Source: Anolis carolinensis | Taxonomy: Eukaryota | Assembly (NCBI RefSeq): GCF_035594765.1 | Contig: NC_085841.1 | Span: 346,651,402-346,715,401, forward strand | Length of the DNA stretch: 64,000 bases | Direction: 5' to 3' | Shown: in pieces, positions 11,899-33,530 of the stretch | Position numbering within the stretch: position 1 is the first letter of the stretch | Layout: each line of letters starts with the position of its first letter | Notes under the pieces: generated by a model | What the model saw: the letters and a program-made list of their open reading frames with translations, nothing else | What the model was told of the DNA's origin: nothing | The model's database searches: none | Made by a program: the position numbers and the translations under genes

Positions 11899-14800
11899 TT
11901 ACTCCCCAAAGGCACATCGGAAAAGCCATGTTTTTAGATCTTTCTTAAAGGCTAACAAGGTGGGGGCTTGCCTAATCTCAGTGGGCAATGAATTCCACAG
12001 TCGGGGGGCCACAGCAGAAAAAGCCCTCTCCCTCGTTCCCACAAGACGGGCCTGGGACAGAGGCAGTGGCGAAAGAAGGGCCTCCCCGGATGAGCGGAGG
12101 GAACGAGCAGGTTTATGGTAGGAGATACGGTCCCTAAGGTAGGTGGGTCCCAAACCGTTTAGGGCTTTATAGATGATGGTCTGCACCTTGAATTGGGACC
12201 GGAAAGTGAACGGCAGCCAGTGGAGCTCTTTAAACAGGGGAGTAGATCGTTCCCTGTAGCTCGCCCCTGTTATTAATCTGGCTGCCAAGCGCTGGACCAA
12301 TTGTAGTTTCCGGGCCGTCTTCAAGGGAAGCCCCACGTAGAGCGCATTACAGTAGTCCAGTCTAGAGGTAACTAAGGCATGCACCACCGTGGTCAAGTCA
12401 GACTTCACGAGGTATGGTCGCAGTTGGCGCACAAGTTTGAGTTGTGCGAAAGCCCTCCCGGCCACCGCCGACACCTGAGCCTCAAGCGTCAACGCTGAAT
12501 CCAGGAGGACCCCCAAACTGCGGACCTGTGATTTCAGGGGGAGTGCAACCCCGTCCAGCACAGGTTGCCACCCAATACCCCGATCAGATGGGCGACTGAC
12601 CAGGAGGGCCTCTGTCTTGTCAGGATTGATCCTCAGCTTGTTCCTCCTCATCCAGTCCGCCACAGCGGCCAGGCACTGGTTCAGAATCCGAGGGGCTTCC
12701 TTGGAGTTAGATGGAAATGAGTAGTGGATTTGCGTGTCATCTGCGTAGAGATGGCAACACCCTCCAAAACTCCGGATGACCTCTCCCAACGGTTTCATGT
12801 AGATGTTAAATAGCATAGGGGATAAAATAGACCCTTGCGGGACCCCACAGGTCAATGGCCAGGGGTCCGAGCAGGTGTCCCCCAGCTTCACCCTCTGGGA
12901 ACGACCCTCCAGGAAGGACTGGAGCCACAGCAGAACCGTGCCACCGAGCCCCATCCCGGCGAGCCTCCCCAGAAGGATACTATGGTCGATGGTATCGAAA
13001 GCCGCTGAGATGTCCAAGAGAACCAGCAGGGTCACACTCCCCCTGTCCAGCTCCCTGCGGAGGTCATCCACCAGGGCGACCAAAGCCATCTCGGTGCTGT
13101 GCCCAGGCCTGAAGCCAGACTGCGAGCGGTCCAGAAAATCAGTGTCATCGAGAAATTCCTGGAGCTGCGTGGCAACCACCCGCTCCAGAACCTTGCCCAA
13201 AAACGGGAGGTTGGAGATTGGTCTGTAGTTGTTACAAATAGATGGGTCAAGCGAAGGCTTTTTTAGTAGTGGTTTTACTACCGCCTGCTTAAAGTAGGAT
13301 GGCACCGACCCCTGAACCAAAGAAGCATTTATTATGGTCACAAACCAATCCAACAACCCATCTTTGGCCAGCTTGACCAGCCAAGAGGGACAAGGATCCA
13401 GAGCGCAGGTGGTCGCCCTCACAGACCCAAGAATCCCCTCCACGTCATCAGGAAGAACAAGCCGGAAAGAATCCCATAAGATCGAACAGACAGGTACCTC
13501 GGTTACCTCCGCTGAGACCACAATTGAGCTGGAGTCTAGCTCAAGGCGTATCTGAGCAACTTTGCCTGCAAAGTGGTGCGCGAAATCGCTGCACCCAGTT
13601 GCCAAGTCATCGGGAAGCCCCTGGACCTCAGGAGGCCGCAGGAGCTCCCCCACAACTCGGAACAACTCCGATGGCCTGTTGGCTGCAGACGCTATGCGGG
13701 CAGTCGTGAAAACTTTCCTGGCTGCTCGCAGAGCCACGGAGTACGCCTTAATAGCGGCTTTAGCCCGTGCTTGGTCGGACACGTCCCGAGATTTCCTCCA
13801 GATGCACTCTAGTCCCCTCCTCCTACGCTTCATCACAGCCAACTCCTCGGTAAACCAAGGAGTCGACGCGACTCTACGCAGTGAGAGGGGACGTTCGGGA
13901 GCGATCGTGTCCAATGCCCTTGATAGCTCACTATTATAGCGATCAACCAGGACATCGACAGGATCGCCAGTCTCCAGGACAGGAAGATCCCCAAGAGACC
14001 TCAGAAGTCCATCCGGATCCATCAGTCTCCTGGGGCGGACCATCTTAATGGGTCCACCACCCCTGCGGAGGTTAGAAGGCACGGCGATACTTAAACAGAT
14101 CAGATGATGGTCAGACCATGACAATGGAAGAATGTTTTGCTCTTCCACTCTGACTGTCCCACCGTCCACAATAAAAACAAGGTCCAAGGTGTGTCCTGCC
14201 TGATGTGTGGGCCCAGATATAACTTGAGACAGCCCCATGGTTGTCATGGCAACCATGAAATCCTGAGCTGCACCTGTCAATGTGGTCTCGGCATGAATGT
14301 TAAAGTCTCCCAAAACTATCAGTTGTTGGGAGACAAGGGCCGCATTGGAGACCACTTCTGCTAGCTCGGACAGAGAGACTGCTGGGTCGCGGGGTGGACG
14401 GTACACCAACAGAATCCCCAAGCTGTCTCGGGCTCCCACCTTCAGGAAGACACACTCGAACCTCGGGGATTGTGGAACGGCGCATCTGATCAGGGCGATG
14501 GACTGCCGAAAGATCACCGCAACTCCTCCTCCCCGCCCCCCAACTCTGGCCTGTTGATGCACCCCGAAACCAGGAGGACACAGCTGGGTAAGATTCACAC
14601 CTCCCAGCTCATCCAGCCATGTCTCAGTGATGCATGCCAGATCTGCCCTCTCATCCAGGATCAAATCCTGGATGACAGCTGTTTTACCATTGACAGATCT
14701 GGCGTTCAAAAGCAAGACCTTAAGGTTGGGGGGTCTGTCCTGAAGACTACCACACCTAATCCTCTCCAGGGTCGCAAAAACTCTGTTGCGCTTCTCCCTG

Positions 14801-14916
14801 GGTTGGTGGTGACCGTGCTTTCTCCTCCCCCATATCACCTCAATGGAGCCACCTCCAGTCAAGCCCTCCTCCCCCTGATGGAAGAACTGGGCGGAATTGC
14901 CAGTTGCCGGGACTAG
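11899..14916 (-). CDS. L2 ORF2: AP-endonuclease plus reverse transcriptase; the open frame starts right after the ORF1 stop and has no 5' AUG
   Basis: APE motifs NARS, TETWL, GGGVA, YRPP, GDFN, HTLD, SDH. RT motifs YRPISNL, QSGFR, DISAAFDTIDH, GVPQGSILSP, YADD. L2-type C-terminus (SRLDYCN...LHWLP...FSAVAPRLWNSLP...FKKDLKTWLF). The track start at 14862 is TTG; the frame is open back to 14916. Confidence 0.95.
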   Translation of the reverse strand, partial: LVPATGNSAQFFHQGEEGLTGGGSIEVIWGRRKHGHHQPREKRNRVFATLERIRCGSLQDRPPNLKVLLLNARSVNGKTAVIQDLILDERADLACITETWLDELGGVNLTQLCPPGFGVHQQARVGGRGGGVAVIFRQSIALIRCAVPQSPRFECVFLKVGARDSLGILLVYRPPRDPAVSLSELAEVVSNAALVSQQLIVLGDFNIHAETTLTGAAQDFMVAMTTMGLSQVISGPTHQAGHTLDLVFIVDGGTVRVEEQNILPLSWSDHHLICLSIAVPSNLRRGGGPIKMVRPRRLMDPDGLLRSLGDLPVLETGDPVDVLVDRYNSELSRALDTIAPERPLSLRRVASTPWFTEELAVMKRRRRGLECIWRKSRDVSDQARAKAAIKAYSVALRAARKVFTTARIASAANRPSELFRVVGELLRPPEVQGLPDDLATGCSDFAHHFAGKVAQIRLELDSSSIVVSAEVTEVPVCSILWDSFRLVLPDDVEGILGSVRATTCALDPCPSWLVKLAKDGLLDWFVTIINASLVQGSVPSYFKQAVVKPLLKKPSLDPSICNNYRPISNLPFLGKVLERVVATQLQEFLDDTDFLDRSQSGFRPGHSTEMALVALVDDLRRELDRGSVTLLVLLDISAAFDTIDHSILLGRLAGMGLGGTVLLWLQSFLEGRSQRVKLGDTCSDPWPLTCGVPQGSILSPMLFNIYMKPLGEVIRSFGGCCHLYADDTQIHYSFPSNSKEAPRILNQCLAAVADWMRRNKLRINPDKTEALLVSRPSDRGIGWQPVLDGVALPLKSQVRSLGVLLDSALTLEAQVSAVAGRAFAQLKLVRQLRPYLVKSDLTTVVHALVTSRLDYCNALYVGLPLKTARKLQLVQRLAARLITGASYRERSTPLFKELHWLPFTFRSQFKVQTIIYKALNGLGPTYLRDRISYHKPARSLRSSGEALLSPLPLSQARLVGTRERAFSAVAPRLWNSLPTEIRQAPTLLAFKKDLKTWLFRCAFGE

Positions 14917-15870
14917 TCAACTGTCCTGGAAAGGAAAGCCTCCAAAAGTGCTTGTTTGTTTACAAAAGGAGCTTCTCTCCATTAATGGGAGAGAGGAGTC
15001 GATTGATTTGGCCTCATCATGAATAGTAAGCCGACTAGACAAGAGTGGAGACTTGTTGTGGGACTGGGGGGTAGAACAAGCACGACTTCGCAGTGGGGAA
15101 TCTTGAACATCCATACTCGGCCCGATGTCCAAGGGGCGAATTAGTGGGTCTACTAGCACCCTCCTAAGAGTGATGCCCCACTGTTGCAGTTTAGGCCCAC
15201 ACAAATACAATTTATCCCTTAATATTTTATCTTCCAAGCCGATGATAAGACACAGGGAGCGGTTCCAGGATTGGTACTCCCTACAAAGCCAGTCGATAGT
15301 CTTAATCTTCACTTCCGACCGGCTTATGGATAAAATTTGAGAGAGAGATATCTGGACCGCTCGCTTAGAAGTCCACCTGCCTCTATTCAATAATGAGTCT
15401 GAAACTTCCACTGCAACCTTATTTGTTCGTAAAAGATGTTGAGAATTGCAGGAAGTAACCAAAGATTGTTCGACCAATTTAGAGGACAGCTCATTATTCG
15501 GCTTCTGCAGGGCATTGTTGGTATCCTTCCTATCCATCCTCCCCATGCTCATTCCCACAGATAAGGCCCCACCCCCCTTTCTAGTTACTCCAAGGCCTGA
15601 TCCGACGACTACCTTCTCCTCCTTAGGCTTAATTCCCCCATGGCCTTCCAGAGAGCTTAATTCCTTATTCATGTTAATGGGCCTGGTTGATATAGTTGTT
15701 ATAATGTCCGTAGGAGAAGGATTTTTTACAATCAGGGAAATTCCTTTGAAGAGATGGTCAAGTTTCAAGTTCAGAATTTCCAGCTGTTGCAAGACGGTAT
15801 TGAATGATTTTCCCAGCAGATCACATAGGTTTGCGAGTTCATTCTTCCCTGAAGTTTCCTTCCAACTCAT
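14917..15870 (-). CDS. L2 ORF1 (317 aa), putative nucleic-acid chaperone
   Basis: ATG-started 317-aa ORF directly upstream of ORF2. It has an N-terminal leucine-rich heptad-like segment and a C-terminal alpha/beta region reminiscent of LINE ORF1 RRM domains (inference). Confidence 0.8.
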   Translation of the reverse strand: MSWKETSGKNELANLCDLLGKSFNTVLQQLEILNLKLDHLFKGISLIVKNPSPTDIITTISTRPINMNKELSSLEGHGGIKPKEEKVVVGSGLGVTRKGGGALSVGMSMGRMDRKDTNNALQKPNNELSSKLVEQSLVTSCNSQHLLRTNKVAVEVSDSLLNRGRWTSKRAVQISLSQILSISRSEVKIKTIDWLCREYQSWNRSLCLIIGLEDKILRDKLYLCGPKLQQWGITLRRVLVDPLIRPLDIGPSMDVQDSPLRSRACSTPQSHNKSPLLSSRLTIHDEAKSIDSSLPLMERSSFCKQTSTFGGFPFQDS

Positions 15871-16812
15871 TTCCTGTTACCTTCTCAGAGAACCTTCCTA
15901 TAGTATACCACTCTACTCTTTCAAGAATTAACACCACGTTCCGTTCAAGCTTTCATTCAACAGTACATCCACCAACATACACAAACCATCAATTCACATT
16001 CTAGAGCCATCAATTACCAAACAGTAAACTCACGGTACTCTCCAATCCTATGTGATCACTTCCTATGACATTAATACCAGGTTAAAAACCTGCCCCCTCT
16101 CACGACCAAAACTACTTCCCTGAATTAAGTTAAAAGCTTTCTCACTCCCGACTCTGTTAACACACACACACAAACACGTACACACACACCAAAAAAAAAA
16201 AAAAGAAGCCAGGCTGTAAACACTCAGAGTCTTATAGAAGCTGCTTCATACAGGTCCACCCAATTGAGGATATCTCGAGGCCTCCTGGTTCGATGTAAAT
16301 GCAGTAGAGCAGAGCTGATGAGGTTGTCTTCCCCCGTAACACGACCTCCAGTGCCAGAGGAAAAACGCTGGAATGGCGGACGGGCTACTTCCTCCCTCCT
16401 CCTCTCCTCCGCGATCCTCTACAGCCTTCAAACAGCTCCAACAACTCTCAGGGTAGGCCCGAAAGCCCCAAGGCACAGCGCTGAAAGAGCTGCGGGAGGC
16501 CGCCCAGTCCGGAGCGGTCCCCGGAGGCCGATTCTCTTTAGCACGTCCGAGAGAGGGCTGGAGGTGGCCGCCCGGTTCGGCGCGGCCTCCACGGGCCTAG
16601 TTATTACAAGGCCGGAAAGAGGTTGGAGGAGGCCACCCGGTCCGGCGTGGCCTCCAAAGGCCTAGATTCTCTTCGAGGCTGAGTGAAGGCTACAGGAAGC
16701 CGCCCGGTTCGGCGCGGCTTCCAGAGGCCTCGTTGTTTTCTGATGGCTGAAGGGGGGGGGCTAGGAGAGGCCACCCGATTCGAAGCTGCCTCCAGAGGGC
16801 GAGGGTGGTCAC

Positions 16813-17311
16813 CGGAGGCCGAGGCAGGAGCTGAAAAGAAAGCCTCCAAGGCTGGTAAGAGCACTCGGGGAGGCAGCCCGGTTCGGCGCTGCCTCCAGAG
16901 GGTGCGGGTGGTCGTCGGAGGCCGAGGCAGGAGCTGAAAAGAAGGCCTCCAAGGCTGGTAAGAGCACTCGGGGAGGCAGCCCGGTTCGGCGCTGCCTCCA
17001 GAGGGTGCGGGTGGTCGTCGGAGGCCGAGGCAGGAGCTGAAAAGAAGGCCTCCAAGGCTGGTAAGAGCACTCGGGGAGGCAGCCCGGTTCGGCGCTGCCT
17101 CCAGAGGGTGCGGGTGGTCGTCGGAGGCCGAGGCAGGAGCTGAAAAGAAGGCCTCCAAGGCTGGTAAGAGCACTCGGGGAGGCAGCCCGGTTCGGCGCTG
17201 CCTCCAGAGGGTGCGGGTGGTCGTCGGAGGCCGAGGCAGGAGCTGAAAAGAAGGCCTCCAAGGCTGGTAAGAGCACTCGGGGAGGCAGCCCAGTTCGGCG
17301 CTGCCTCCAGA
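16813..17311. repeat. 103-bp tandem repeat, ~5 near-identical copies, in the L2 5' UTR
   Basis: The anchor CTGAAAAGAA recurs at 16831, 16934, 17037, 17140 and 17243, a period of exactly 103 bp. Confidence 0.95.
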
Positions 17312-17658
17312 GTTGAGGACGAGACCGGGGAGAGGCCACCCGGTTCGGCGTGGGCTCAGATAAACAGAAGAGAGCTGGGAGCGATCGTCCGGCTCCCCCC
17401 CAATGCTCACCACCACCGTCGGGACTCTCAGATCGGGCAGCCGGAATGGCGGCCGGGCTTCTCCTCTCCCTCCTGGACTTCTGCAGCTCCGTCGGCGGCT
17501 CCTACAGCCCTTGCAGTAAGGCCACGTTTCCAGAGTTAGCCAGCAGCCTCACCCCTCTAATAGCAGCCGGTTGGGGGTATGGTGGGGCCGTATAACAGGG
17601 ATAAGTGGCGGTATTTTTGCTCCTCGTCGGCGGAGCTAGTCACGGAGGCTGTTTTCAT

Positions 17659-17670
17659 GCCGCCATCTTG
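17659..17670 (-). promoter_or_regulatory. YY1 consensus motif CAAGATGGCGGC at the L2 5' terminus (internal Pol II promoter candidate)
   Basis: Exact match to the extended YY1 consensus, within a few nt of the element boundary and at the edge of a CpG island. Confidence 0.65.
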
Positions 17671-17947
17671 CCTCTATCATTCCACACCCAGAATCTTCCC
17701 TTTCTCTTTTGCCAGTATCCTGGCATAATGGCAACTGCAAGTAATATGGTATCTCTTCTGGTCACTGTTTTGGAGAGGATACTGTCGGCCGGGGTTTATT
17801 TTAAGTTGGGAATTTTAATCTGCATTTCCATCAGTGGATTTTAACTTGTATCTCGTTTATGTCTTTTAATAGTGTTTTATCCCTTGTTTTAATAATGTTG
17901 TATCCCACCTTGAGCTGCAGGGAGAGCCAGGCAATACATCAATCATT

Positions 17948-17989
<42 letters not shown>

Positions 17990-26075: not shown

Positions 26076-29000
26076 GAACTTTGTGTGTGTGTGTCATCAC
26101 ACACATACACACACACCTTAATCTGAGGAAGGAGAAACTCAAGAGCGTGGAATGCCCAGGGAGTGCTAAACCAAAACTTCTTTAAAAAGTATGATCATGT
26201 TGTCTTGGGAAAGCAACACAAGGGAGTCCATAGCCCTTGTTCCAATACTTAAGAATCAGTGCTTCAGAATCTTTGTTCTAAATTCAGTGTCCAACTGTTC
26301 TCAGCAGGCTTGCTTTGTCACTTTGATATCCCTCTTTCCCTCCGGGGTAATCTTTTTTTTTTTTTTTTAACCACACTTCTCCTACTTTGGTCTGTCAAAG
26401 CTGCCATTTGCTAGCCTGACTTGCGAGGAAAACAGAATGAACATCAATCTTGTCAAGCGCCACGCCGTTAGGAAGCTTCCTGTAATGATAATGTGCGTGT
26501 CTGGGTTTTTTAGCTGCTGTCAGTCAAAATCACTAGTTCCAAGATAAGGTTATGGGAAGACCTACAATAACAAGAATGGGACTCTTACAGACAACAGCAC
26601 AGATTGCAGCTTCCCAGTGGGTCATCATTCCCAGACGCCAAAGTGTAAGCCTGGTGCTTTGTCTGGTTTGAAGTTACTGATGCTGACCGAGAGAGACAGC
26701 AGATTGCATTTTACACTTAGACCAATGTTTAGCAAAGGTGAGAGAAATTCACAGCCAACTGCCACAGCAACTGGGACTGCCAAGAGGCCAAAGATCATGA
26801 GCAGAGTGTATTGTTCAATGTTAATTCTCTAGCACCTCCAGTTAGCATTAAAAAGATAGCAAGGTCTATGCTTGAGACCTTGGAAAAGTGCTGCAAATAC
26901 TGCCAGGTTTGCCTTAGAATTAGGAGCCTCGTATGTTCACGCCTTTTCTGCAATTATAATTTCCATGACAGCCCTAATGTGTTTTGTGTCCATTGTAAGT
27001 CACCAGCCACCTCCAGGGCAAGGAGGCCTATAGATGCTGGAGATGTTTTTGTAAGTCATTCAGCCAAAGGGGCTCTTGCAAAAATGTTAGGACTTGCACA
27101 TTTTAACAATTAAAGCACACCCACACCCAACACAAAGAGCCTTGCATGGATCTTAATTTGGAAAAATGAAAAACGTAGACAAGATTTCATCTCTCTCTTT
27201 TGTTGTTGTTACATTACAATTTCATTTATTTTGTTTGATTTTTGCTATCTCAAGGTTTGCTACCTCAATATGAGAAAAGGAGATGAAACATTTTGGGAGT
27301 GTCATGAATGCCACCCATGTCAAGCGTTGTCAACTTGCCTCTTCATTAACAGCAGGAATAGTAATTGGGCTGTTGTTGAATTACAGTGGCCAGCAGTCCT
27401 ATCCCATATATCAAATTGTGAGGAATGCTGGGAATTGCAATTCAGTAACAACTCTAGAGCCACACAAATTGACCCTGATTACAACTCTATCCACCTCAAA
27501 AGGCATTTTCACCCTTTCTCCTCTTCCATGACCTCCACTGGACCTCAATTCCTTCTGCAAAGAGAGGGAGCTTTTCTTTTGCACTTCTATTGTAGTTCAC
27601 ATAAAAACAGTGGTGTACCTGCTTGTAGTAGCATAGCTGGCAGTGCAATAGAAATAGTTTTACAAAATAAAGGAGAATTTTCACTTCAGAACCACATTCA
27701 ACCTGACAAGGTGACCTCTGATGAGGCTCACCAGGCTGAAAATCTGAGAGCCTATGAACTGTTAATGGGTATATAGAAGAGGGAATTTAAGTTCTTGCTT
27801 GTTACGTATTTGCAACACCTAGTGAAACTTACTCTTCTACACATTCATGAAAGGTTAAAGAGCCCTGTAGCTTTCAGCATGGCAACCCTAGTCCTTCATG
27901 CCTCGTGCCTATCTACAGCCCGGTTTGAATCAGGGCTCTTGGACACATAAACATAGGTATTTGGGGACATCACATGAATTTGTTATTCATATTTTTACAA
28001 ACTTGTTGATGAGGTAAGTCCTTACCAAAGAGTAGGGGGTTTATTTTTTTGTATCACATTTCAAGGATAGGTTACATTTTATATACTGCATTTTAATACT
28101 TTTAAAGACAAAATAAACAACTGTAATCTGACTATGATGAGCGAGATTACACAGGATAAAACTTTAAACAGGAATCATGACAAACTCAAAATGACATTAA
28201 GCAGCTATGATAACACAGGTGAAGTAAGACAATGACACAGATAAGACATTTCTGATAAGGATAAGGGGAGTGAAAACCTCTTGCTTGGAGCAAAGATAAC
28301 ACATTTGGTCATAGATCAGTGGGCTAGAGATGTCGAACTCCTGGCTGTCTGGAAAACCACATGTTAAGGAATACATTCAAAAATATTAATTAACTCGGTT
28401 TCAGAGTGTCCAAAAACTCAACAAAGCTCAGGAAAGTTACTCTTCGGATTACAGCTCCGTAACCCCCCAGCTAAGGGGACTGTGGAAGCAGTAGCTCAAA
28501 AAAGGAATTGTTCAAAAAGATCTGGAAACAAAATGGATTTGGGAGAGTGGAAATGATGTGGGAAACTAATCCTGAAGAATGATGTGGATCAGGATGGGAG
28601 TGGAATCAGGGAGAGGGAGACTTGTGCTGCGATTCTGCTTCTCTCACATAGTTTTATTTAACCTTCATATATCATTTTGAAACAAAGCTTTGGAAAAAGA
28701 AACAGAATTTGGATATCATGGAAGCAACAGAACGGAAAAAGTCTTAAGAAAGACAGGAAGAAAAAGAAAAAGCTGAAAAGTCAAGTGAGAAAAAACCACC
28801 AAAGATCAAAGCATTTACATACAAGACTGTGCCCTCAAGTCCCATATCAGCTAAAAGGCTCAGAAGAATACCATAGTCAATAGTACCAAATACCATTGAA
28901 AGATCCAGGAGGACTAGCAGGAACACACTCTACATCTAACTCCCGTGCAGGTCATCCACCAAGGTGAACAAAGCTGTTTCTGCCCATAACCGGGCCTGAA

Positions 29001-29369
29001 CTCAGATTGAAATGGATCCAGGTAATCCATTTCTAAGAAAGCCTGGAGTTGTGTTGTCACCACTCACTCTTAAGACCTTACTTAAAAAGAGAAGATTAAA
29101 GAGTGACCGATAGTTACCTAGGGAGGAGGTGTCCCATGAAGGTTTGTTTTCAGCAAGTGGCCAGTCCTTCCCTGGCAGCTTTAATCAATCAAGATGGATA
29201 TATGTGTAAGAGACAAGTACTTGGCCTCACCTCTCCAAGCAATATGCCCACATCATCATACTGAACAACCTGAAACACATCAATCAAAACTAGACAGCAA
29301 ATCTAAACCCAGATATTTGTCTATCCGTGACAATGTGGTTCTTTCAAACTTCCCTATCCCCAGATCACC

Positions 29370-29371
<2 letters not shown>

Positions 29372-29439
<68 letters not shown>

Positions 29440-29993
29440 CGTTGCTCAAATGATTCATTGGAACTTGTGCCACAAATACCATCTGCCTGCGACAAAGAAC
29501 TGGTGGGATCACAAGCCAGAAAAAGTTACAGAGAATGAGCATGTCAAGCTACTCTGGGACTTCAGAATTCAGACAGACAAGGTTTTGGAGCACAATACTC
29601 CTGACCTCACGATCGTGTTAAAAGACAAAGTATGGATTGTCGATGTCGCAATCCAAGGTGACGGCAGGATTGAGGAGAAACAACTGAAAAAGTTGACACG
29701 ATATGAGAATTTAAAGATTGAACTACAAAGACTCTGGCACAAGCCAGTCAAGGTGGTCCCAGTGGTGATCGGCACACTGGGTGCAGTGCCTAAAGGCCTT
29801 GGCCTGCACTTAAACACAATCGCGCTGACAAAATCACCATCTGCCAGCTGCAGAAGGCCACCTTACTGGGATCTGCTCGCATTACTCGCTGATACATCAC
29901 ACAGTCCTAGACACTTGGGAAGTGTCCGACGTGTGATCCAATTCAACAGCCAGCAGAGTGTATGCTGTGGACTCATTTTGTTGTGTTTCTAGT

Positions 29994-30055
<62 letters not shown>

Positions 30056-30736
30056 CAACAACAAATTTATTTGTACTCCACTACTATCTCCCCCAAGGGA
30101 CTTGGGGCGGCTTACAGCAGCACATAATAGCGCCATAAAACACATAAAAATACAGGTAAAATTACATCAACATGTTAATATAACAATTTCAATTAACATA
30201 AAATACCACATTACAAAATAAAAGGCCAACCCCAATTTAAAAGAACAGTCAGTAAAACACAGCAATAACTACTATTAAAATGGATAGTACAACATCCTGG
30301 CCCCTGCCAAATTTCAACATTCATAGAATCATAGAATCATAGAATAGTAGAGTTGGAAGAGACCTCATGGGCCATCCAGTCTACTATTCTATGATTCTAT
30401 GATTCTTAAAGTGCCAGTGTCAATATTAAGTTATTTGGTCCTTAATATTAGCTGATGTCTTGGTCATTTTCAAAAGCCTGCCTAAAGAGCCATGTTTTCA
30501 GCTCCTTGCAGAAACACTGTGTGGGGGCAAGCCTAATATCCCTGGGGGGGCATTCCAAAGCCAGGAGGGCACCACCAAGAAGGCCCTCTCCCCCATCCCC
30601 ACCAACCGCACTTGAGATGAAAATGGGACCAAGAGGAGGGCATCCCAGCAGATCTTAGAGCCCACACCGGTTCATGGGAGGGATGCAGTCATGAAGATAG
30701 GTTGGACCCAAACTGTGCAGAGCTTTGTAGGTAATA
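29372..30736 (-). mobile_element. Younger 5'-truncated L2 inserted in the old L2, with 5-bp TSD ACCAT
   Basis: L2 C-terminal coding sequence plus 3' stem-loop (30065-30115) and an (AAT)n tail; ACCAT at 29367-29371 and 30737-30741. Confidence 0.75.
29438..29994 (+). mobile_element. R4/Dong-clade LINE 3' fragment inserted in (TAA)n
   Basis: RLE domain IHWNLC...LLWDFRIQTD...PDLTIV...IVDVAI...K...Y..L; long (TAA)n arrays on both sides. Confidence 0.9.
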
Positions 30737-33530
30737 ACCATCATCCTGACCAGCAAAAATCAGATCAATAGTGAGGCTTGTTATATGTGTAGGGCCAGAT
30801 ATTAAATTGAAGTAGGACCATAATTACCATGGGAGCCATGAAATCCTGGGCGTTCCCTGATATGTGTACCTCAGCATGGATGTTCAAATCCCCCAAATAA
30901 ATTAAGTTTGTGGGAGATCAAAACCATTTCTAAGATCACCTCCTGCACTTCAAGAAGGGGGATAGTTGGAAAACAGAACCCCAGTCCTGTTTTATTGTGC
31001 TATTGCAAGATGTGCACACTCAAAACTTGGGAGATTGTCAAACAGGGTACTTCAATATGAGAATGAACCCATGATTGATTACTGCAACTCCTATTAGTAT
31101 TAAATTGACATAGGAAATTGGGGTGGGAATTCAAGTACCACAGATGTTAGTGTTCAAATGCCCAGCTTCTAATTTTGAGATAGGCTGGGAAATGTTCTAC
31201 AGCCGACACTGTTCGGATAAACTAGTGCAAATTGGAATTCATAGCTGAAAGCAGAGAAATAATGCAATTGGGGGGTATACAATGAATAGCAGGGGACTGT
31301 TAATAAGGGGTTTAACTTGACAATTTCAGCATGAAAAATTAACAACTGCAGAAATACTCGTATTTATCATCAGGGTCTCTGTGGGGTACACACAATATAA
31401 ACAATGTGCAGCACCATACTATTCCTGTCTTACAGATACAACAAAGCAGGGCTGAAATAAACTATGTTATGAATATTCAAAAATGGCTGCCTTCTTTTGC
31501 TTTTCAGGGTGGAAATGTTATATTTTGAGGAAAAGGAAAGAAAGAAAATTCAGCGACTTTCTGGAGCATGAAAAAATATACATGAGGAAATAAGAGGACT
31601 GGAGAGGAAAGACACAGTGCCTCTCATTGGGGGTCACTGTGCATCAGGAGTACAATAGGAATGAACAGGGAATATATATACTGCCTCAATGCAGTATATA
31701 TATTCTCCTTCTCTGGAAGTTTTTAAACAAAGGTTGGATGGTCATCTGTCAGGATATTCCTTCATGGCAGGGAGTTGGGACTGGATGGCCCTTGTGGTCT
31801 CTTTCCAACTTTATGGTTCTAAATCAATGATTTCCAACCTTTGATTTTCCAGGTGTTTTGGACCTCAGATCCCAAAATTCCTGACAATTTAACAAGCTGT
31901 CTGGGCTTCTGGGAGTTGAAGTCACAAACAGATGAGTGAAGGCTGGAAATCACTGTTGAAGTAGTATCTGTCAAAATTCATCCAAGAAATCAGTAGAATG
32001 GGTTTATAGGATTTTAATGGCTAGGGCAAAAGCAGATGTGAAGCGACCTAGAACTGGCATTAGTGTCGGCATTAGAACTGCAAATCCAGAGATATCTGTG
32101 GTGCTGCCCTTTGTGGTATTGCAGGGAGCTACAGGAAGGAATGTCGTCTTCTCTGTCAAATATTCCCAGGCTCATCAATGACTTGATTGCACTTAGGATG
32201 CCCACCACTCCATTCTGTCGCAGTGAAATTCGATAAATATATTCCAAATTAGTGTAGAACTTTATCAGGAAAACAACGTTTTATCTCCAATGGTTGCTAG
32301 TGGTGGCCATATTGATAGGGTAGTAAATACATCCCAACTTTTAATCAAAAATTTAAAGGAGCTCCCCAAGGTGCTAAATGTATGGAAAGAGGGGAACAAA
32401 GTTCAACACCTTGGACAGTTCTGTTCAGATGCAAAAGCCTAGAGCAAACTAACATGGAAGCCATCCGCCATGACTGTCTGACACCTAATTCATGGATGAT
32501 GGGTGAATCTACACACTGTAGAATTAATGCTGTTTGACATTTCTTCGACTGCCAGTGCTCATTGCTATGGAATCATGAAAGCAGCAGTTTTACAAGGTCT
32601 TTACCAAACACCAAATCCCAGGATTCCATGTCATTGAATCATAGTAGCTAAAGTGGTGTTAAGCTACATTAATTCTACAGTCAGTAAGTCTATATTGACC
32701 ACTGCTGGCTTATGAATTTTGATTATACAGTCAGCTTACTCTTCAATAAAGAGCAGGGCTAAAACTGTTTAAAATAATAAAATTATATTATAATATATCT
32801 TCAATGAGCATAATGACCAGGTCATAATTTGTCAAGAGCAGTGGTACCGAATTATTTTCATTTACGGTATTTATATGTTAATACAAATACACTAAGTTCT
32901 GAACAAGCTACAAGCTCCCTCTCCTTTTGCCTTTTGTATAAGGAGACTGCATTCTAATACAAGAGATGTTTTTCCCCTCCACCATCACTACATGTTATGA
33001 GTCACTCATTCTCCAGTTCAGAATTGGCCTTGTGATATTGTAAATTAAAATAATAACAACTGCCGCCCCCACAAACAGGAGGAGACTTGGGGGGAAATAA
33101 AGAAAAATATGCAATTTTATGTTACTTGTGGGAGGTATATACATGGTTCCGTAAAGAAATAATTGCCACATTATAAAACTAACAAGCACCGACTGGAAAG
33201 GAGTCCTTGGGGGAGGAAAAGAGGAGGGGCCCATATTTATCATTAATGAGAAGTCTGAGCTAAAGTCACGAATTGGATGAGTTGGAACCACAAGTAGCAA
33301 AGAACATGGCATTTACTGCCTTGGGAGAAGGACAAAAGTCTACAGCCTCATTAAACCTGGCCAGTATTCGTGTGAACATAACTTTAAGATACGCAGATTT
33401 GAGCTTCTGAATATTTGTCCCCAAAAGGCTCATAACCAACCTGTGTTATTTGATACATAAGCTAGAGACATTGCTAGGTCTCTTCCCACATTAACACATG
33501 CAGGGTTATCTTCAGCTGGTGTGTTTAAAG

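What the first reader, a model, noticed from the sequence alone, without database searches (positions are those of the whole stretch)
14860..14925. L2 LINE with ORF1 and ORF2 joined in frame by a single UGA-CUAG readthrough-type stop
Seen: on the element strand the junction reads ...CAG GAC AGT TGA CTA GTC CCG GCA ACT GGC.... ORF1 ends at TGA (14919-14917), and the same frame stays open for 18 more codons (LVPATGNSAQFFHQGEEG) into the 987-codon APE-RT frame. The ORF-track 'start' at 14862 is TTG. The first in-frame AUG is Met203, downstream of the APE motifs NARS, TETWL, YRPP and GDFN, so AUG initiation would give a truncated endonuclease. Known: UGA-CUAG is a well-characterised leaky-stop context (alphavirus nsP3/nsP4 UGA-CUA; mammalian AQP4, LDHB, MDH1, OPRL1, MAPK10). 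LINE ORF2 translation is usually described as termination/reinitiation (L1, SART1). Inference: this family may make a ~1323-aa ORF1-ORF2 fusion by programmed readthrough, a gag-pol-like way of setting stoichiometry that I do not know of in vertebrate LINEs.
Basis: partly seen in the sequence, partly recalled or inferred. Interest (0 to 1): 0.92.

Follow-up and report, generated by a model that had tools for sequence, protein, structure and literature searches.

The report
Lizard L2 LINE with leaky in-frame stop
An apparently intact L2 jumping gene of an Anolis lizard has its two genes in one reading frame, separated only by a stop codon in the best-known leaky context (UGA-CUAG), and the second gene has no usable AUG, so the enzyme may be made as a fusion by reading through the stop, though restarting translation without an AUG is not excluded.

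Summary
On the minus strand, ORF1 (317 aa, 15870-14920) ends at TGA 14919-14917. CTAG follows directly. The same frame runs open for 1005 codons through the endonuclease and reverse transcriptase, and its first AUG lies after the endonuclease motifs.

The stop is not a private mutation:
- A relative with 61% ORF1 identity ends at the same ...FQDS.
- High-depth contigs from four public runs match the junction to one letter.
- A second Anolis L2 family (locus L004, ORF1 37% identical) keeps AGY-TGA-CTAG-KCCC in frame with both ORFs, although its flanks no longer align.

Against a strict readthrough reading:
- A sister subfamily (ORF2 94% identical) has an AUG four codons after the stop.
- More distant L2 families carry their own AUG, and one of them (three copies seen as DNA) has no ORF1.
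- No RNA structure follows the stop.
- Mammalian L1 already shows ORF2 translation that does not need an AUG.

My odds are about 0.5 that readthrough gives an ORF1p-ORF2p fusion and is the main route to ORF2. I give about 0.33 to reinitiation or non-AUG initiation. Two other first-stage notes report the same junction on other pieces of this genome. I found no paper describing it.

The parts
15871..17500 (-). 5' UTR of the element. The 5' boundary is approximate. It holds tandem arrays at 16767-17312 (103 bp x 5.3) and 16567-16734 (67 bp x 2.6).
   Evidence: GC 0.65-0.68
14917..15870 (-). ORF1: 317 aa plus the TGA, AT-rich, no Pfam family. The model shows an N-terminal long helix (residues 3-49), a small alpha/beta domain (151-237) with weak RRM-like matches, and a disordered tail (243-317).
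   Evidence: relatives P0121-P0127, all from Anolis carolinensis,
14909..14922 (-). Conserved junction motif AGT TGA CTA GTC CC (AGY-TGA-CTAG-KCCC). The stop is at 14919-14917 and CTAG at 14916-14913.
14845..14916 (-). Spacer of 24 codons after the stop (LVPATGNSAQFFHQGEEGLTGGGS). It is open, in frame, has no AUG, and diverges fast. The TTG listed as the ORF 'start' is 14862-14860.
   Evidence: only 50% identity to P0135 here against 89-96% elsewhere, with no gaps
14812..14844 (-). Motif upstream of the endonuclease, IEVIWGRRKHG (family pattern IEVIxGRxRY). It is shared by Anolis, Podarcis and Varanus L2 ORF2s, so translation should start upstream of it.
11899..14916 (-). ORF2 frame: 1005 codons plus stop. 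Endonuclease at about 14107-14703, reverse transcriptase at about 12511-13263.
14254..14256 (-). First in-frame ATG of the ORF2 frame (residue 221 after the stop). It lies downstream of the endonuclease catalytic motifs. Ensembl-type models of 785 aa start here.
11568..11898 (-). 3' UTR, ending in a (TTA)n microsatellite tail at about 11568-11589.

Best explanation
This is a full-length L2-type LINE of an Anolis lizard, most likely A. carolinensis, with both reading frames intact. It belongs to a lineage that carries a lineage-specific ORF1, whose predicted form is a coiled coil plus an RRM-like domain. In this lineage ORF1 and the endonuclease/reverse-transcriptase ORF2 share one frame. They are separated by a single UGA in the context AGY-UGA-CUAG-KCCC, and ORF2 has no AUG upstream of its endonuclease. 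I propose that most ribosomes stop at the UGA and make ORF1p. A few percent insert an amino acid at UGA-CUAG and continue, giving a 1323-aa ORF1p-ORF2p fusion. This sets a gag-pol-like ratio and ties the enzyme to the ORF1p/RNA particle. Shown: the anatomy, the ancestry of the stop, the conservation of the motif and of the frame, and the lack of an AUG. Inferred: that readthrough happens at a useful rate and is the route by which ORF2 is made.
For: (1) Anatomy.
(2) The stop is ancestral. P0121 (61% identical ORF1) ends ...FQDS like the window. Five ORF1 family members end in Ser after otherwise variable tails.
(3) Contigs across the junction differ from 14817-14962 by one letter: X3 record 18 at depth 193, X15 record 3 at depth 2745, X16 record 9 at depth 795. 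In X3 the depths identify that letter as 14892 C>T. This AUG-less junction is therefore multi-copy. The only indels listed near it are a compensating pair.
(4) L004 has an ORF1 37% identical and DNA homology to the window that starts only 69 nt after the stop. It still reads AGC TGA CTA GGC CC in frame with ORF1 and ORF2. Its spacer is 25 codons against 24, so the length difference is a multiple of three.
(5) In the ORF1-less family the homologous site is a sense codon (AGA AAA CTA GTA). A diverged member reads R-I-I-V there, so CTA is not kept where there is no stop.
(6) The 785/784-aa models of three related clusters begin at the internal Met. This implies no upstream AUG in those copies.
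(7) The motif IEVIxGRxRY, conserved in all L2 families, lies only 24 codons after the stop. Translation must therefore begin in or before the AUG-less spacer.
(8) In vertebrate cells UGA-CUA alone gives 1.5% readthrough and UGA-CUAG genes give 3.5-31%. Twelve nucleotides 3' of the stop suffice. L004's UGA-CUAGGC equals the OPRL1, Ross River and Getah context (PMC4132726).
Against: A sister subfamily (P0135, P0140, P0141; ORF2 93-94% identical, gapless) has an AUG at codon 5 after the stop. That is the classic layout for termination-reinitiation.
ORF1-less L2 families in the same genome work with an ordinary AUG (L008 is intact at 1071 aa).
The region 3' of the stop folds no better than shuffled sequence (z +0.6 to +0.8).
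L004 also has a TAA 13 codons before the TGA and other defects, so only the window gives a clean example at the DNA level.
DNA of the junction was obtained for just two ORF1-bearing families. 192 lesser variants in the read table were hidden, so constancy of TGA across all copies is not shown.
No ORF1-ORF2 fusion protein, ribosome footprint or peptide evidence exists.
Mammalian L1 ORF2 is translated without needing its AUG (PMC5009743).
Confidence: 0.5

Rival explanations
1. ORF2 is made as a separate protein by AUG-independent termination-reinitiation, as proposed for mammalian L1, or by initiation at a near-cognate codon in the spacer. The in-frame arrangement and the UGA-CUAG context are inherited baggage, or serve termination or reinitiation. 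Any fusion made by leak-through is a by-product.
For: L1 ORF2 translation is held to be independent of its AUG (PMC5009743). A sister subfamily has an AUG 12 nt after the stop. The spacer holds near-cognate codons: TTG at codon 19 in the window, and CTG at 14 and GTG at 21 in L004. Other L2 families make ORF2 alone from an AUG.
Against: Reinitiation needs neither a shared frame nor CUAG. Yet both are kept between families whose flanks are saturated with change, and the spacer lengths differ by exactly one codon. The near-cognate codons are not conserved in position. No UGGGA (TURBS-like) motif is visible in the roughly 65 nt upstream of the stop, and no downstream structure was found.
Confidence: 0.33
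2. The window's subfamily has lost the ORF2 start (ACT where the sister has ATG). It cannot make ORF2p itself. Its copies are dead or were moved in trans by the AUG-bearing sister subfamily.
For: P0135-type copies have ATG at codon 5. In run X3 the sister-type junction contig is deeper than the window-type one (338 against 193).
Against: Both ORFs of the window copy are fully open over 1322 codons. The AUG-less junction is itself multi-copy. The L004 family and the 83% cluster also lack the AUG. Codon 5 reads ACT, AAT, ATA and ATG in four lineages, so ATG looks derived. LINE proteins act mostly in cis (established knowledge for L1).
Confidence: 0.1
3. The TGA is a nonsense mutation private to this copy, in what is really a single long ORF.
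For: None found.
Against: P0121 ends at the same residue. L004 has TGA at the homologous site. High-depth junction contigs from four runs match the window. All seven ORF1 relatives in 1.8 billion representative proteins are 236-356 aa long and none is fused to ORF2.
Confidence: 0.02

Closest known systems
Vertebrate UGA-CUAG readthrough genes (OPRL1, OPRK1, AQP4, MAPK10, MDH1, LDHB) and the alphavirus nsP3/nsP4 UGA-CUA stop
   Same: The stop and the four following bases are identical. L004 even has UGA-CUAGGC, as in OPRL1, Ross River and Getah viruses. No 3' structure is needed in those cases either (PMC4132726).
   Different: In those genes the extension is short (13-30 aa) or is a viral polymerase. 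Here the extension would be a whole 1005-aa endonuclease/reverse transcriptase of a LINE. Readthrough has not been measured here.
Gammaretrovirus gag-pol readthrough (murine leukaemia virus type)
   Same: A structural, RNA-binding ORF and an enzyme ORF share one frame and are split by one stop. A fusion would set the ratio of the two products.
   Different: MLV uses UAG plus a downstream pseudoknot (established knowledge). Here the stop is UGA-CUAG with no detectable structure. The element is a non-LTR retrotransposon, and its ORF1p is unrelated to Gag.
Mammalian L1 ORF2 unconventional termination/reinitiation, and silkworm SART1 UAAUG coupling
   Same: A bicistronic LINE RNA whose ORF2 expression does not rely on a normal scanning AUG. 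A sister subfamily here has an AUG 12 nt after the stop.
   Different: In L1 and SART1 a shared frame is not needed and no fusion is made (PMC5009743, PMC3708506). Here the frame and the leaky context are conserved, and the AUG is absent in most ORF1-bearing families sampled.
Other L2-clade LINEs: fish ZfL2-1 (two ORFs), fish/frog single-ORF L2, lizard L2 sub-clade I
   Same: An APE + RT ORF2 and a microsatellite 3' tail. The lizard signature of an AT-rich ORF1 with a GC-rich ORF2 (PMC7140322) is matched.
   Different: The fish ORF1 carries an esterase, and ORF1s are not homologous between L2 sub-clades (PMC7140322). This ORF1 has relatives only in Anolis. I found no description of how lizard L2 joins its ORFs.

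Membership tests
APE-type non-LTR retrotransposon (LINE), L2/CR1 group | Apurinic-like endonuclease domain followed by a reverse transcriptase in one ORF | tested here: met
   Pfam PF03372 (3.3e-15) at residues 72-270 and PF00078 (6.1e-38) at 552-802
APE-type non-LTR retrotransposon (LINE), L2/CR1 group | Placement in the L2 clade by RT phylogeny | not tested
   No tree was built. Indirect support only: the closest proteins are Anolis, Varanus and Podarcis LINE ORF2s, and the published lizard-L2 base-composition signature is matched (PMC7140322).
APE-type non-LTR retrotransposon (LINE), L2/CR1 group | Multi-copy, 5'-truncated copies, simple-repeat 3' tail | tested here: met
   ORF2 depth is 10-100 times the ORF1 depth in four runs. 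L006 and L007 are truncated copies. The tail is (TTA)n.
Programmed stop-codon readthrough, UGA-CUAG class | UGA immediately followed by CUAG | tested here: met
   also in L004
Programmed stop-codon readthrough, UGA-CUAG class | Downstream frame open, in phase, and protein-coding | tested here: met
   1005 open codons encoding APE and RT. L004 is in phase too.
Programmed stop-codon readthrough, UGA-CUAG class | Stop and context conserved among relatives while neighbours vary | tested here: inconclusive
   Met for the two families with DNA (12 of 14 bases kept amid unalignable flanks) and for ORF1 ends at the protein level. But only two DNA examples exist, one of them decayed, and 192 variant rows were not shown.
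Programmed stop-codon readthrough, UGA-CUAG class | Readthrough product demonstrated (reporter, footprints or peptides) | not testable with these tools
   No listed run holding the stretch is on record as RNA. No proteomic data were available.
Termination-reinitiation (SART1 or calicivirus type) | Start codon overlapping or close to the upstream stop | tested here: not met
   The window has no AUG for 220 codons after the stop. The feature is met only in sister subfamily P0135.
Termination-reinitiation (SART1 or calicivirus type) | Stimulatory RNA structure or rRNA-complementary motif near the stop | tested here: not met
   Fold z-scores of +0.6 to +0.8. No UGGGA in the roughly 65 nt upstream.
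Selenocysteine recoding of UGA | SECIS element in the transcript | tested here: not met
   The Rfam scan of 11400-17800 at E<=1 gave only one spurious bacterial sRNA match.

The most novel reading that the evidence does not exclude
An active lizard L2 lineage makes its endonuclease/reverse transcriptase only as an ORF1p-ORF2p fusion, by programmed UGA-CUAG readthrough. This would be the first gag-pol-style recoding shown for a vertebrate LINE. It would be a natural counter-example to the rule that LINE ORF1p and ORF2p are made as separate proteins.
Probability: 0.45. Interest if true: 0.82.

Novelty: new variant of a known kind. Interest (0 to 1): 0.66.

Why it matters
How LINEs translate ORF2 from a bicistronic RNA is still unsettled, even for human L1. 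A LINE lineage that joins ORF1 and ORF2 in frame through the strongest known vertebrate leaky-stop context, and that has dropped the ORF2 AUG, would be a simple natural model. The ratio of the two proteins would be fixed by readthrough, and the enzyme would be physically tied to the RNA-coating protein, which offers a ready explanation for cis-preference. The same genome holds sister families with an AUG after the stop and families with no ORF1 at all. The alternative strategies can therefore be compared within one host. The idea can be tested directly with a reporter assay on about 60 nt of sequence.

Tried and rejected
Copy-specific nonsense mutation: rejected.

Stimulatory RNA structure 3' of the stop, as claimed in note s1-552482 for another copy: not supported here. 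Folds of 103-141 nt in the window, L004 and L005 are no more stable than shuffles. A 6-bp CAGUUG/CAACUG hairpin encloses the stop itself and is absent from L004.

Selenocysteine: no SECIS.

2A-like skipping peptide after the stop: the roughly 65 residues between the stop and the endonuclease contain no NPGP.

Splicing that removes ORF1: good-looking acceptor and donor strings exist near 14925, 14877 and 15881. However, the upstream ATGs all run into stops (read), and no matching joint appears.

More copies were sought without success:
- the window holds no second junction;
- metagenome and viral collections gave nothing;
- the Varanus, Rhineura and Podarcis loci L001-L003 are truncated or lack a recognisable ORF1;
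- L006 and L007 are 5'-truncated;
- P0002, P0123 and P0126 have no contig on record;
- a profile search with the ORF1 alignment returned only RT-contaminated hits.

The single read-laying run showed only the 40 best-supported differences, so I cannot state that no copy varies at the stop. Literature searches for a LINE using readthrough found nothing. Novick et al. 2009 on Anolis LINEs is not held.

Full report
OBSERVATION

On the minus strand the junction reads ...CAG GAC AGT TGA CTA GTC CCG GCA ACT GGC.... ORF1 runs from ATG 15870 to TGA 14919-14917 and has 317 aa. The same frame then stays open for 1005 codons, down to 11902. Pfam finds the endonuclease (PF03372) at residues 72-270 and the reverse transcriptase (PF00078) at 552-802. 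The ORF listing's 'start' at 14862 is a TTG. The first in-frame Met is residue 221 after the stop, which equals Met203 counted from the TTG. It lies beyond NARS, TETWL, YRPP and GDFN.

The element looks complete. It has a GC-rich 5' UTR with 103-bp and 67-bp tandem arrays, an AT-rich ORF1, a GC-rich ORF2, and a 3' UTR ending in (TTA)n. The closest proteins are Anolis carolinensis models (P0133 is 95.8% identical). The host is therefore an anole, most likely A. carolinensis. The base-composition contrast between the ORFs matches what is published for lizard L2 (PMC7140322).

IS THE STOP PRIVATE TO THIS COPY? NO.

(a) A scan of 1.8 billion representative proteins with ORF1 found seven relatives. 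All are from A. carolinensis and all are 236-356 aa long. None is fused to an ORF2.

(b) P0121, 61% identical, ends ...FQDS exactly as the window does. The window, P0121, P0123, P0124 and P0125 all end in Ser after otherwise unalignable tails.

(c) Contigs of four public runs were laid on 14300-15900. They include junction-spanning contigs that differ from the window by one letter. In run X3, and consistently in the others, that letter is 14892 C>T rather than the stop or its context. The depths are 193 (X3), 795 (X16) and 2745 (X15). A sister type with 18 differences and no gaps is also present. The only indels listed near the junction are a compensating pair at 14858 and 14861. One caveat applies: 192 lesser differences were not displayed, so I cannot say that no copy varies at the stop.

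(d) Locus L004 is an A. carolinensis chromosome segment holding P0122. Its ORF1 is only 37% identical to the window's, and DNA homology to the window starts 69 nt after the stop. Yet its junction reads AGC TGA CTA GGC CC, in frame with both ORF1 and ORF2. Twelve of 14 bases (AGY-TGA-CTAG-KCCC) survive amid flanks that are saturated with change. The spacer to the conserved IEV motif is 25 codons against 24, a difference of exactly one codon. L004 is a decayed copy: it has TAA 13 codons before the TGA, a TAG in the IEVV motif, and later frameshifts. It was found because its ORF1 had been annotated as a gene, which biases towards copies whose first defect lies late.

(e) Two other first-stage notes (s1-552482, s1-558061) report the same junction on other pieces of this genome. 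I treat these as leads only.

WHAT OTHER L2 FAMILIES DO

Ensembl-type models in the same 90% cluster as the window's ORF2 come in two forms.
- The 785-aa models start at the internal Met, as expected when no upstream AUG exists.
- The 1001-aa models (P0135, P0140, P0141) start MGNLNQSS.... This places an ATG at codon 5 after the stop, where the window has ACT.

P0135 is 93.7% identical to the window's ORF2 and gapless. In the 24-codon spacer, however, identity is only 50%. The spacer therefore evolves with the fast, modular 5' part. The 83% and 81% clusters again give 784/785-aa models, and L004 has no ATG in its spacer. Codon 5 reads ACT, AAT, ATG and ATA in four lineages, so the ATG is most simply a gain in one subfamily.

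More distant families (65-69% and 49% identical) have their own ATG a few to about 40 codons upstream of the motif IEVIxGRxRY. That motif is shared with Podarcis and Varanus elements.

One such family was fetched three times (L005, L008, L009; 98.6% alike; L008 is intact at 1071 aa). It has no ORF1 at all: the 5' UTR repeats lead straight into an ATG-initiated ORF2. At the site homologous to the window's AGT TGA CTA GTC, it reads AGA AAA CTA GTA. A diverged member of that cluster reads R-I-I-V there (P0219). Without a stop, then, the CTA is not held.

MECHANISM

Because IEVIxGRxRY is conserved in every family, the ORF2 protein should begin upstream of it. In the window that leaves two routes: readthrough from ORF1, or initiation without an AUG within 24 codons.

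UGA-CUAG is the best-characterised leaky context in vertebrates (PMC4132726):
- UGA-CUA alone gives 1.5% readthrough;
- MDH1 gives 3.5% and OPRL1 gives 31%;
- 12 nt downstream of the stop suffice, and no structure is needed.

Some fusion protein is therefore very likely made. A conserved frame, a conserved motif and the absence of an AUG together are what programmed readthrough predicts. Reinitiation does not require them.

Several facts point the other way:
- the sister subfamily's AUG 12 nt after the stop is a textbook reinitiation layout;
- L1 ORF2 is translated independently of its AUG (PMC5009743);
- there is no excess RNA structure after the stop (z +0.6 to +0.8);
- only two DNA examples of ORF1-bearing junctions could be obtained.

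I put readthrough as the main route at about 0.5, AUG-independent reinitiation or non-AUG initiation at about 0.33, a defective subfamily moved in trans at about 0.1, and a private nonsense mutation at about 0.02.

ORF1p

An AlphaFold model (8-sequence alignment, mean pLDDT 54) is confident only for two parts. One is a long N-terminal helix (residues 3-49). The other is a small beta-alpha-beta domain (151-237). The tail from 243 to 317 is disordered. Foldseek gives only weak matches (best E 2e-3). They are mainly RRMs, though ACT and other small alpha/beta domains also appear, and human L1 ORF1p is among them at rank 35. This suggests a layout of coiled coil plus RRM, but it is not established. 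In a fusion, the disordered tail plus the spacer would form a linker of roughly 140 residues to the endonuclease.

COMPARISON AND NOVELTY

The element works like gammaretroviral gag-pol readthrough and uses the signal of the vertebrate UGA-CUAG genes and alphaviruses. It is, however, a LINE. Full-text searches for readthrough in non-LTR elements returned no such case. The library lacks many subscription papers, including Novick et al. 2009. I class the finding as a new variant of a known kind.

The window holds no N.

Noticed in passing
L005:5200-7000, L008, L009 (A. carolinensis chromosomes): A young L2 family without ORF1. About eight 181-bp 5' UTR repeats lead directly into an ATG-initiated ORF2. 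Three copies are 98.6% alike, and one has an intact 1071-aa ORF. RefSeq names that one 'metabotropic glutamate receptor 4 isoform X1', which is a mis-annotation of a LINE inside the gene.
   Followed up: partly
window 11500-17500 against L004 and L005: The L2 families are mosaics. The window and L004 share 77-85% of ORF2 but only 37% of ORF1. L004 and L005 share a 122-nt 5' UTR block at 91% although their ORF2s are 72% alike. The ORF1 + stop + spacer block seems to be swapped as a unit, with a breakpoint near the IEVI motif.
   Followed up: partly
window 14920-15870 (-): ORF1p has no Pfam family and has relatives only in Anolis. The model suggests a coiled coil plus a small RRM-like domain and a disordered tail. 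This resembles the L1 ORF1p layout without detectable sequence similarity.
   Followed up: partly
window 16567-17312 (-): Tandem arrays in the 5' UTR: 103 bp x 5.3 at 97% match, plus 67 bp x 2.6. These are already the subject of note s1-535993. I confirmed only that the repeats exist.
   Followed up: no
window 14911-14918 (-); L005:6870-6877; window 17636-17642 (-): GACTAGTC around the stop is an 8-nt palindrome. The same TGACTAGTC also sits in the 5' UTR of the ORF1-less family (with a 9-bp indel between copies), and TGACTAG sits near the 5' end of the window element. The count in the window is no higher than chance. The meaning is unknown.
   Followed up: partly
window 14764-14775 (-) and L004 homologous site: A CUG in optimal Kozak context (GCG ACC CUG G) is conserved 51 codons after the stop, upstream of the endonuclease. 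A start there would skip the conserved IEVIxGRxRY motif. It is also conserved as protein (FATLE), so it does not discriminate between the hypotheses.
   Followed up: no
window 28822-30917 and 1510-1956: Fragments of other, more distant LINE ORF2s (27-59% identity to this ORF2).
   Followed up: no
window 17937-17989: A (CAT)n microsatellite of 17 units, upstream of the element.
   Followed up: no
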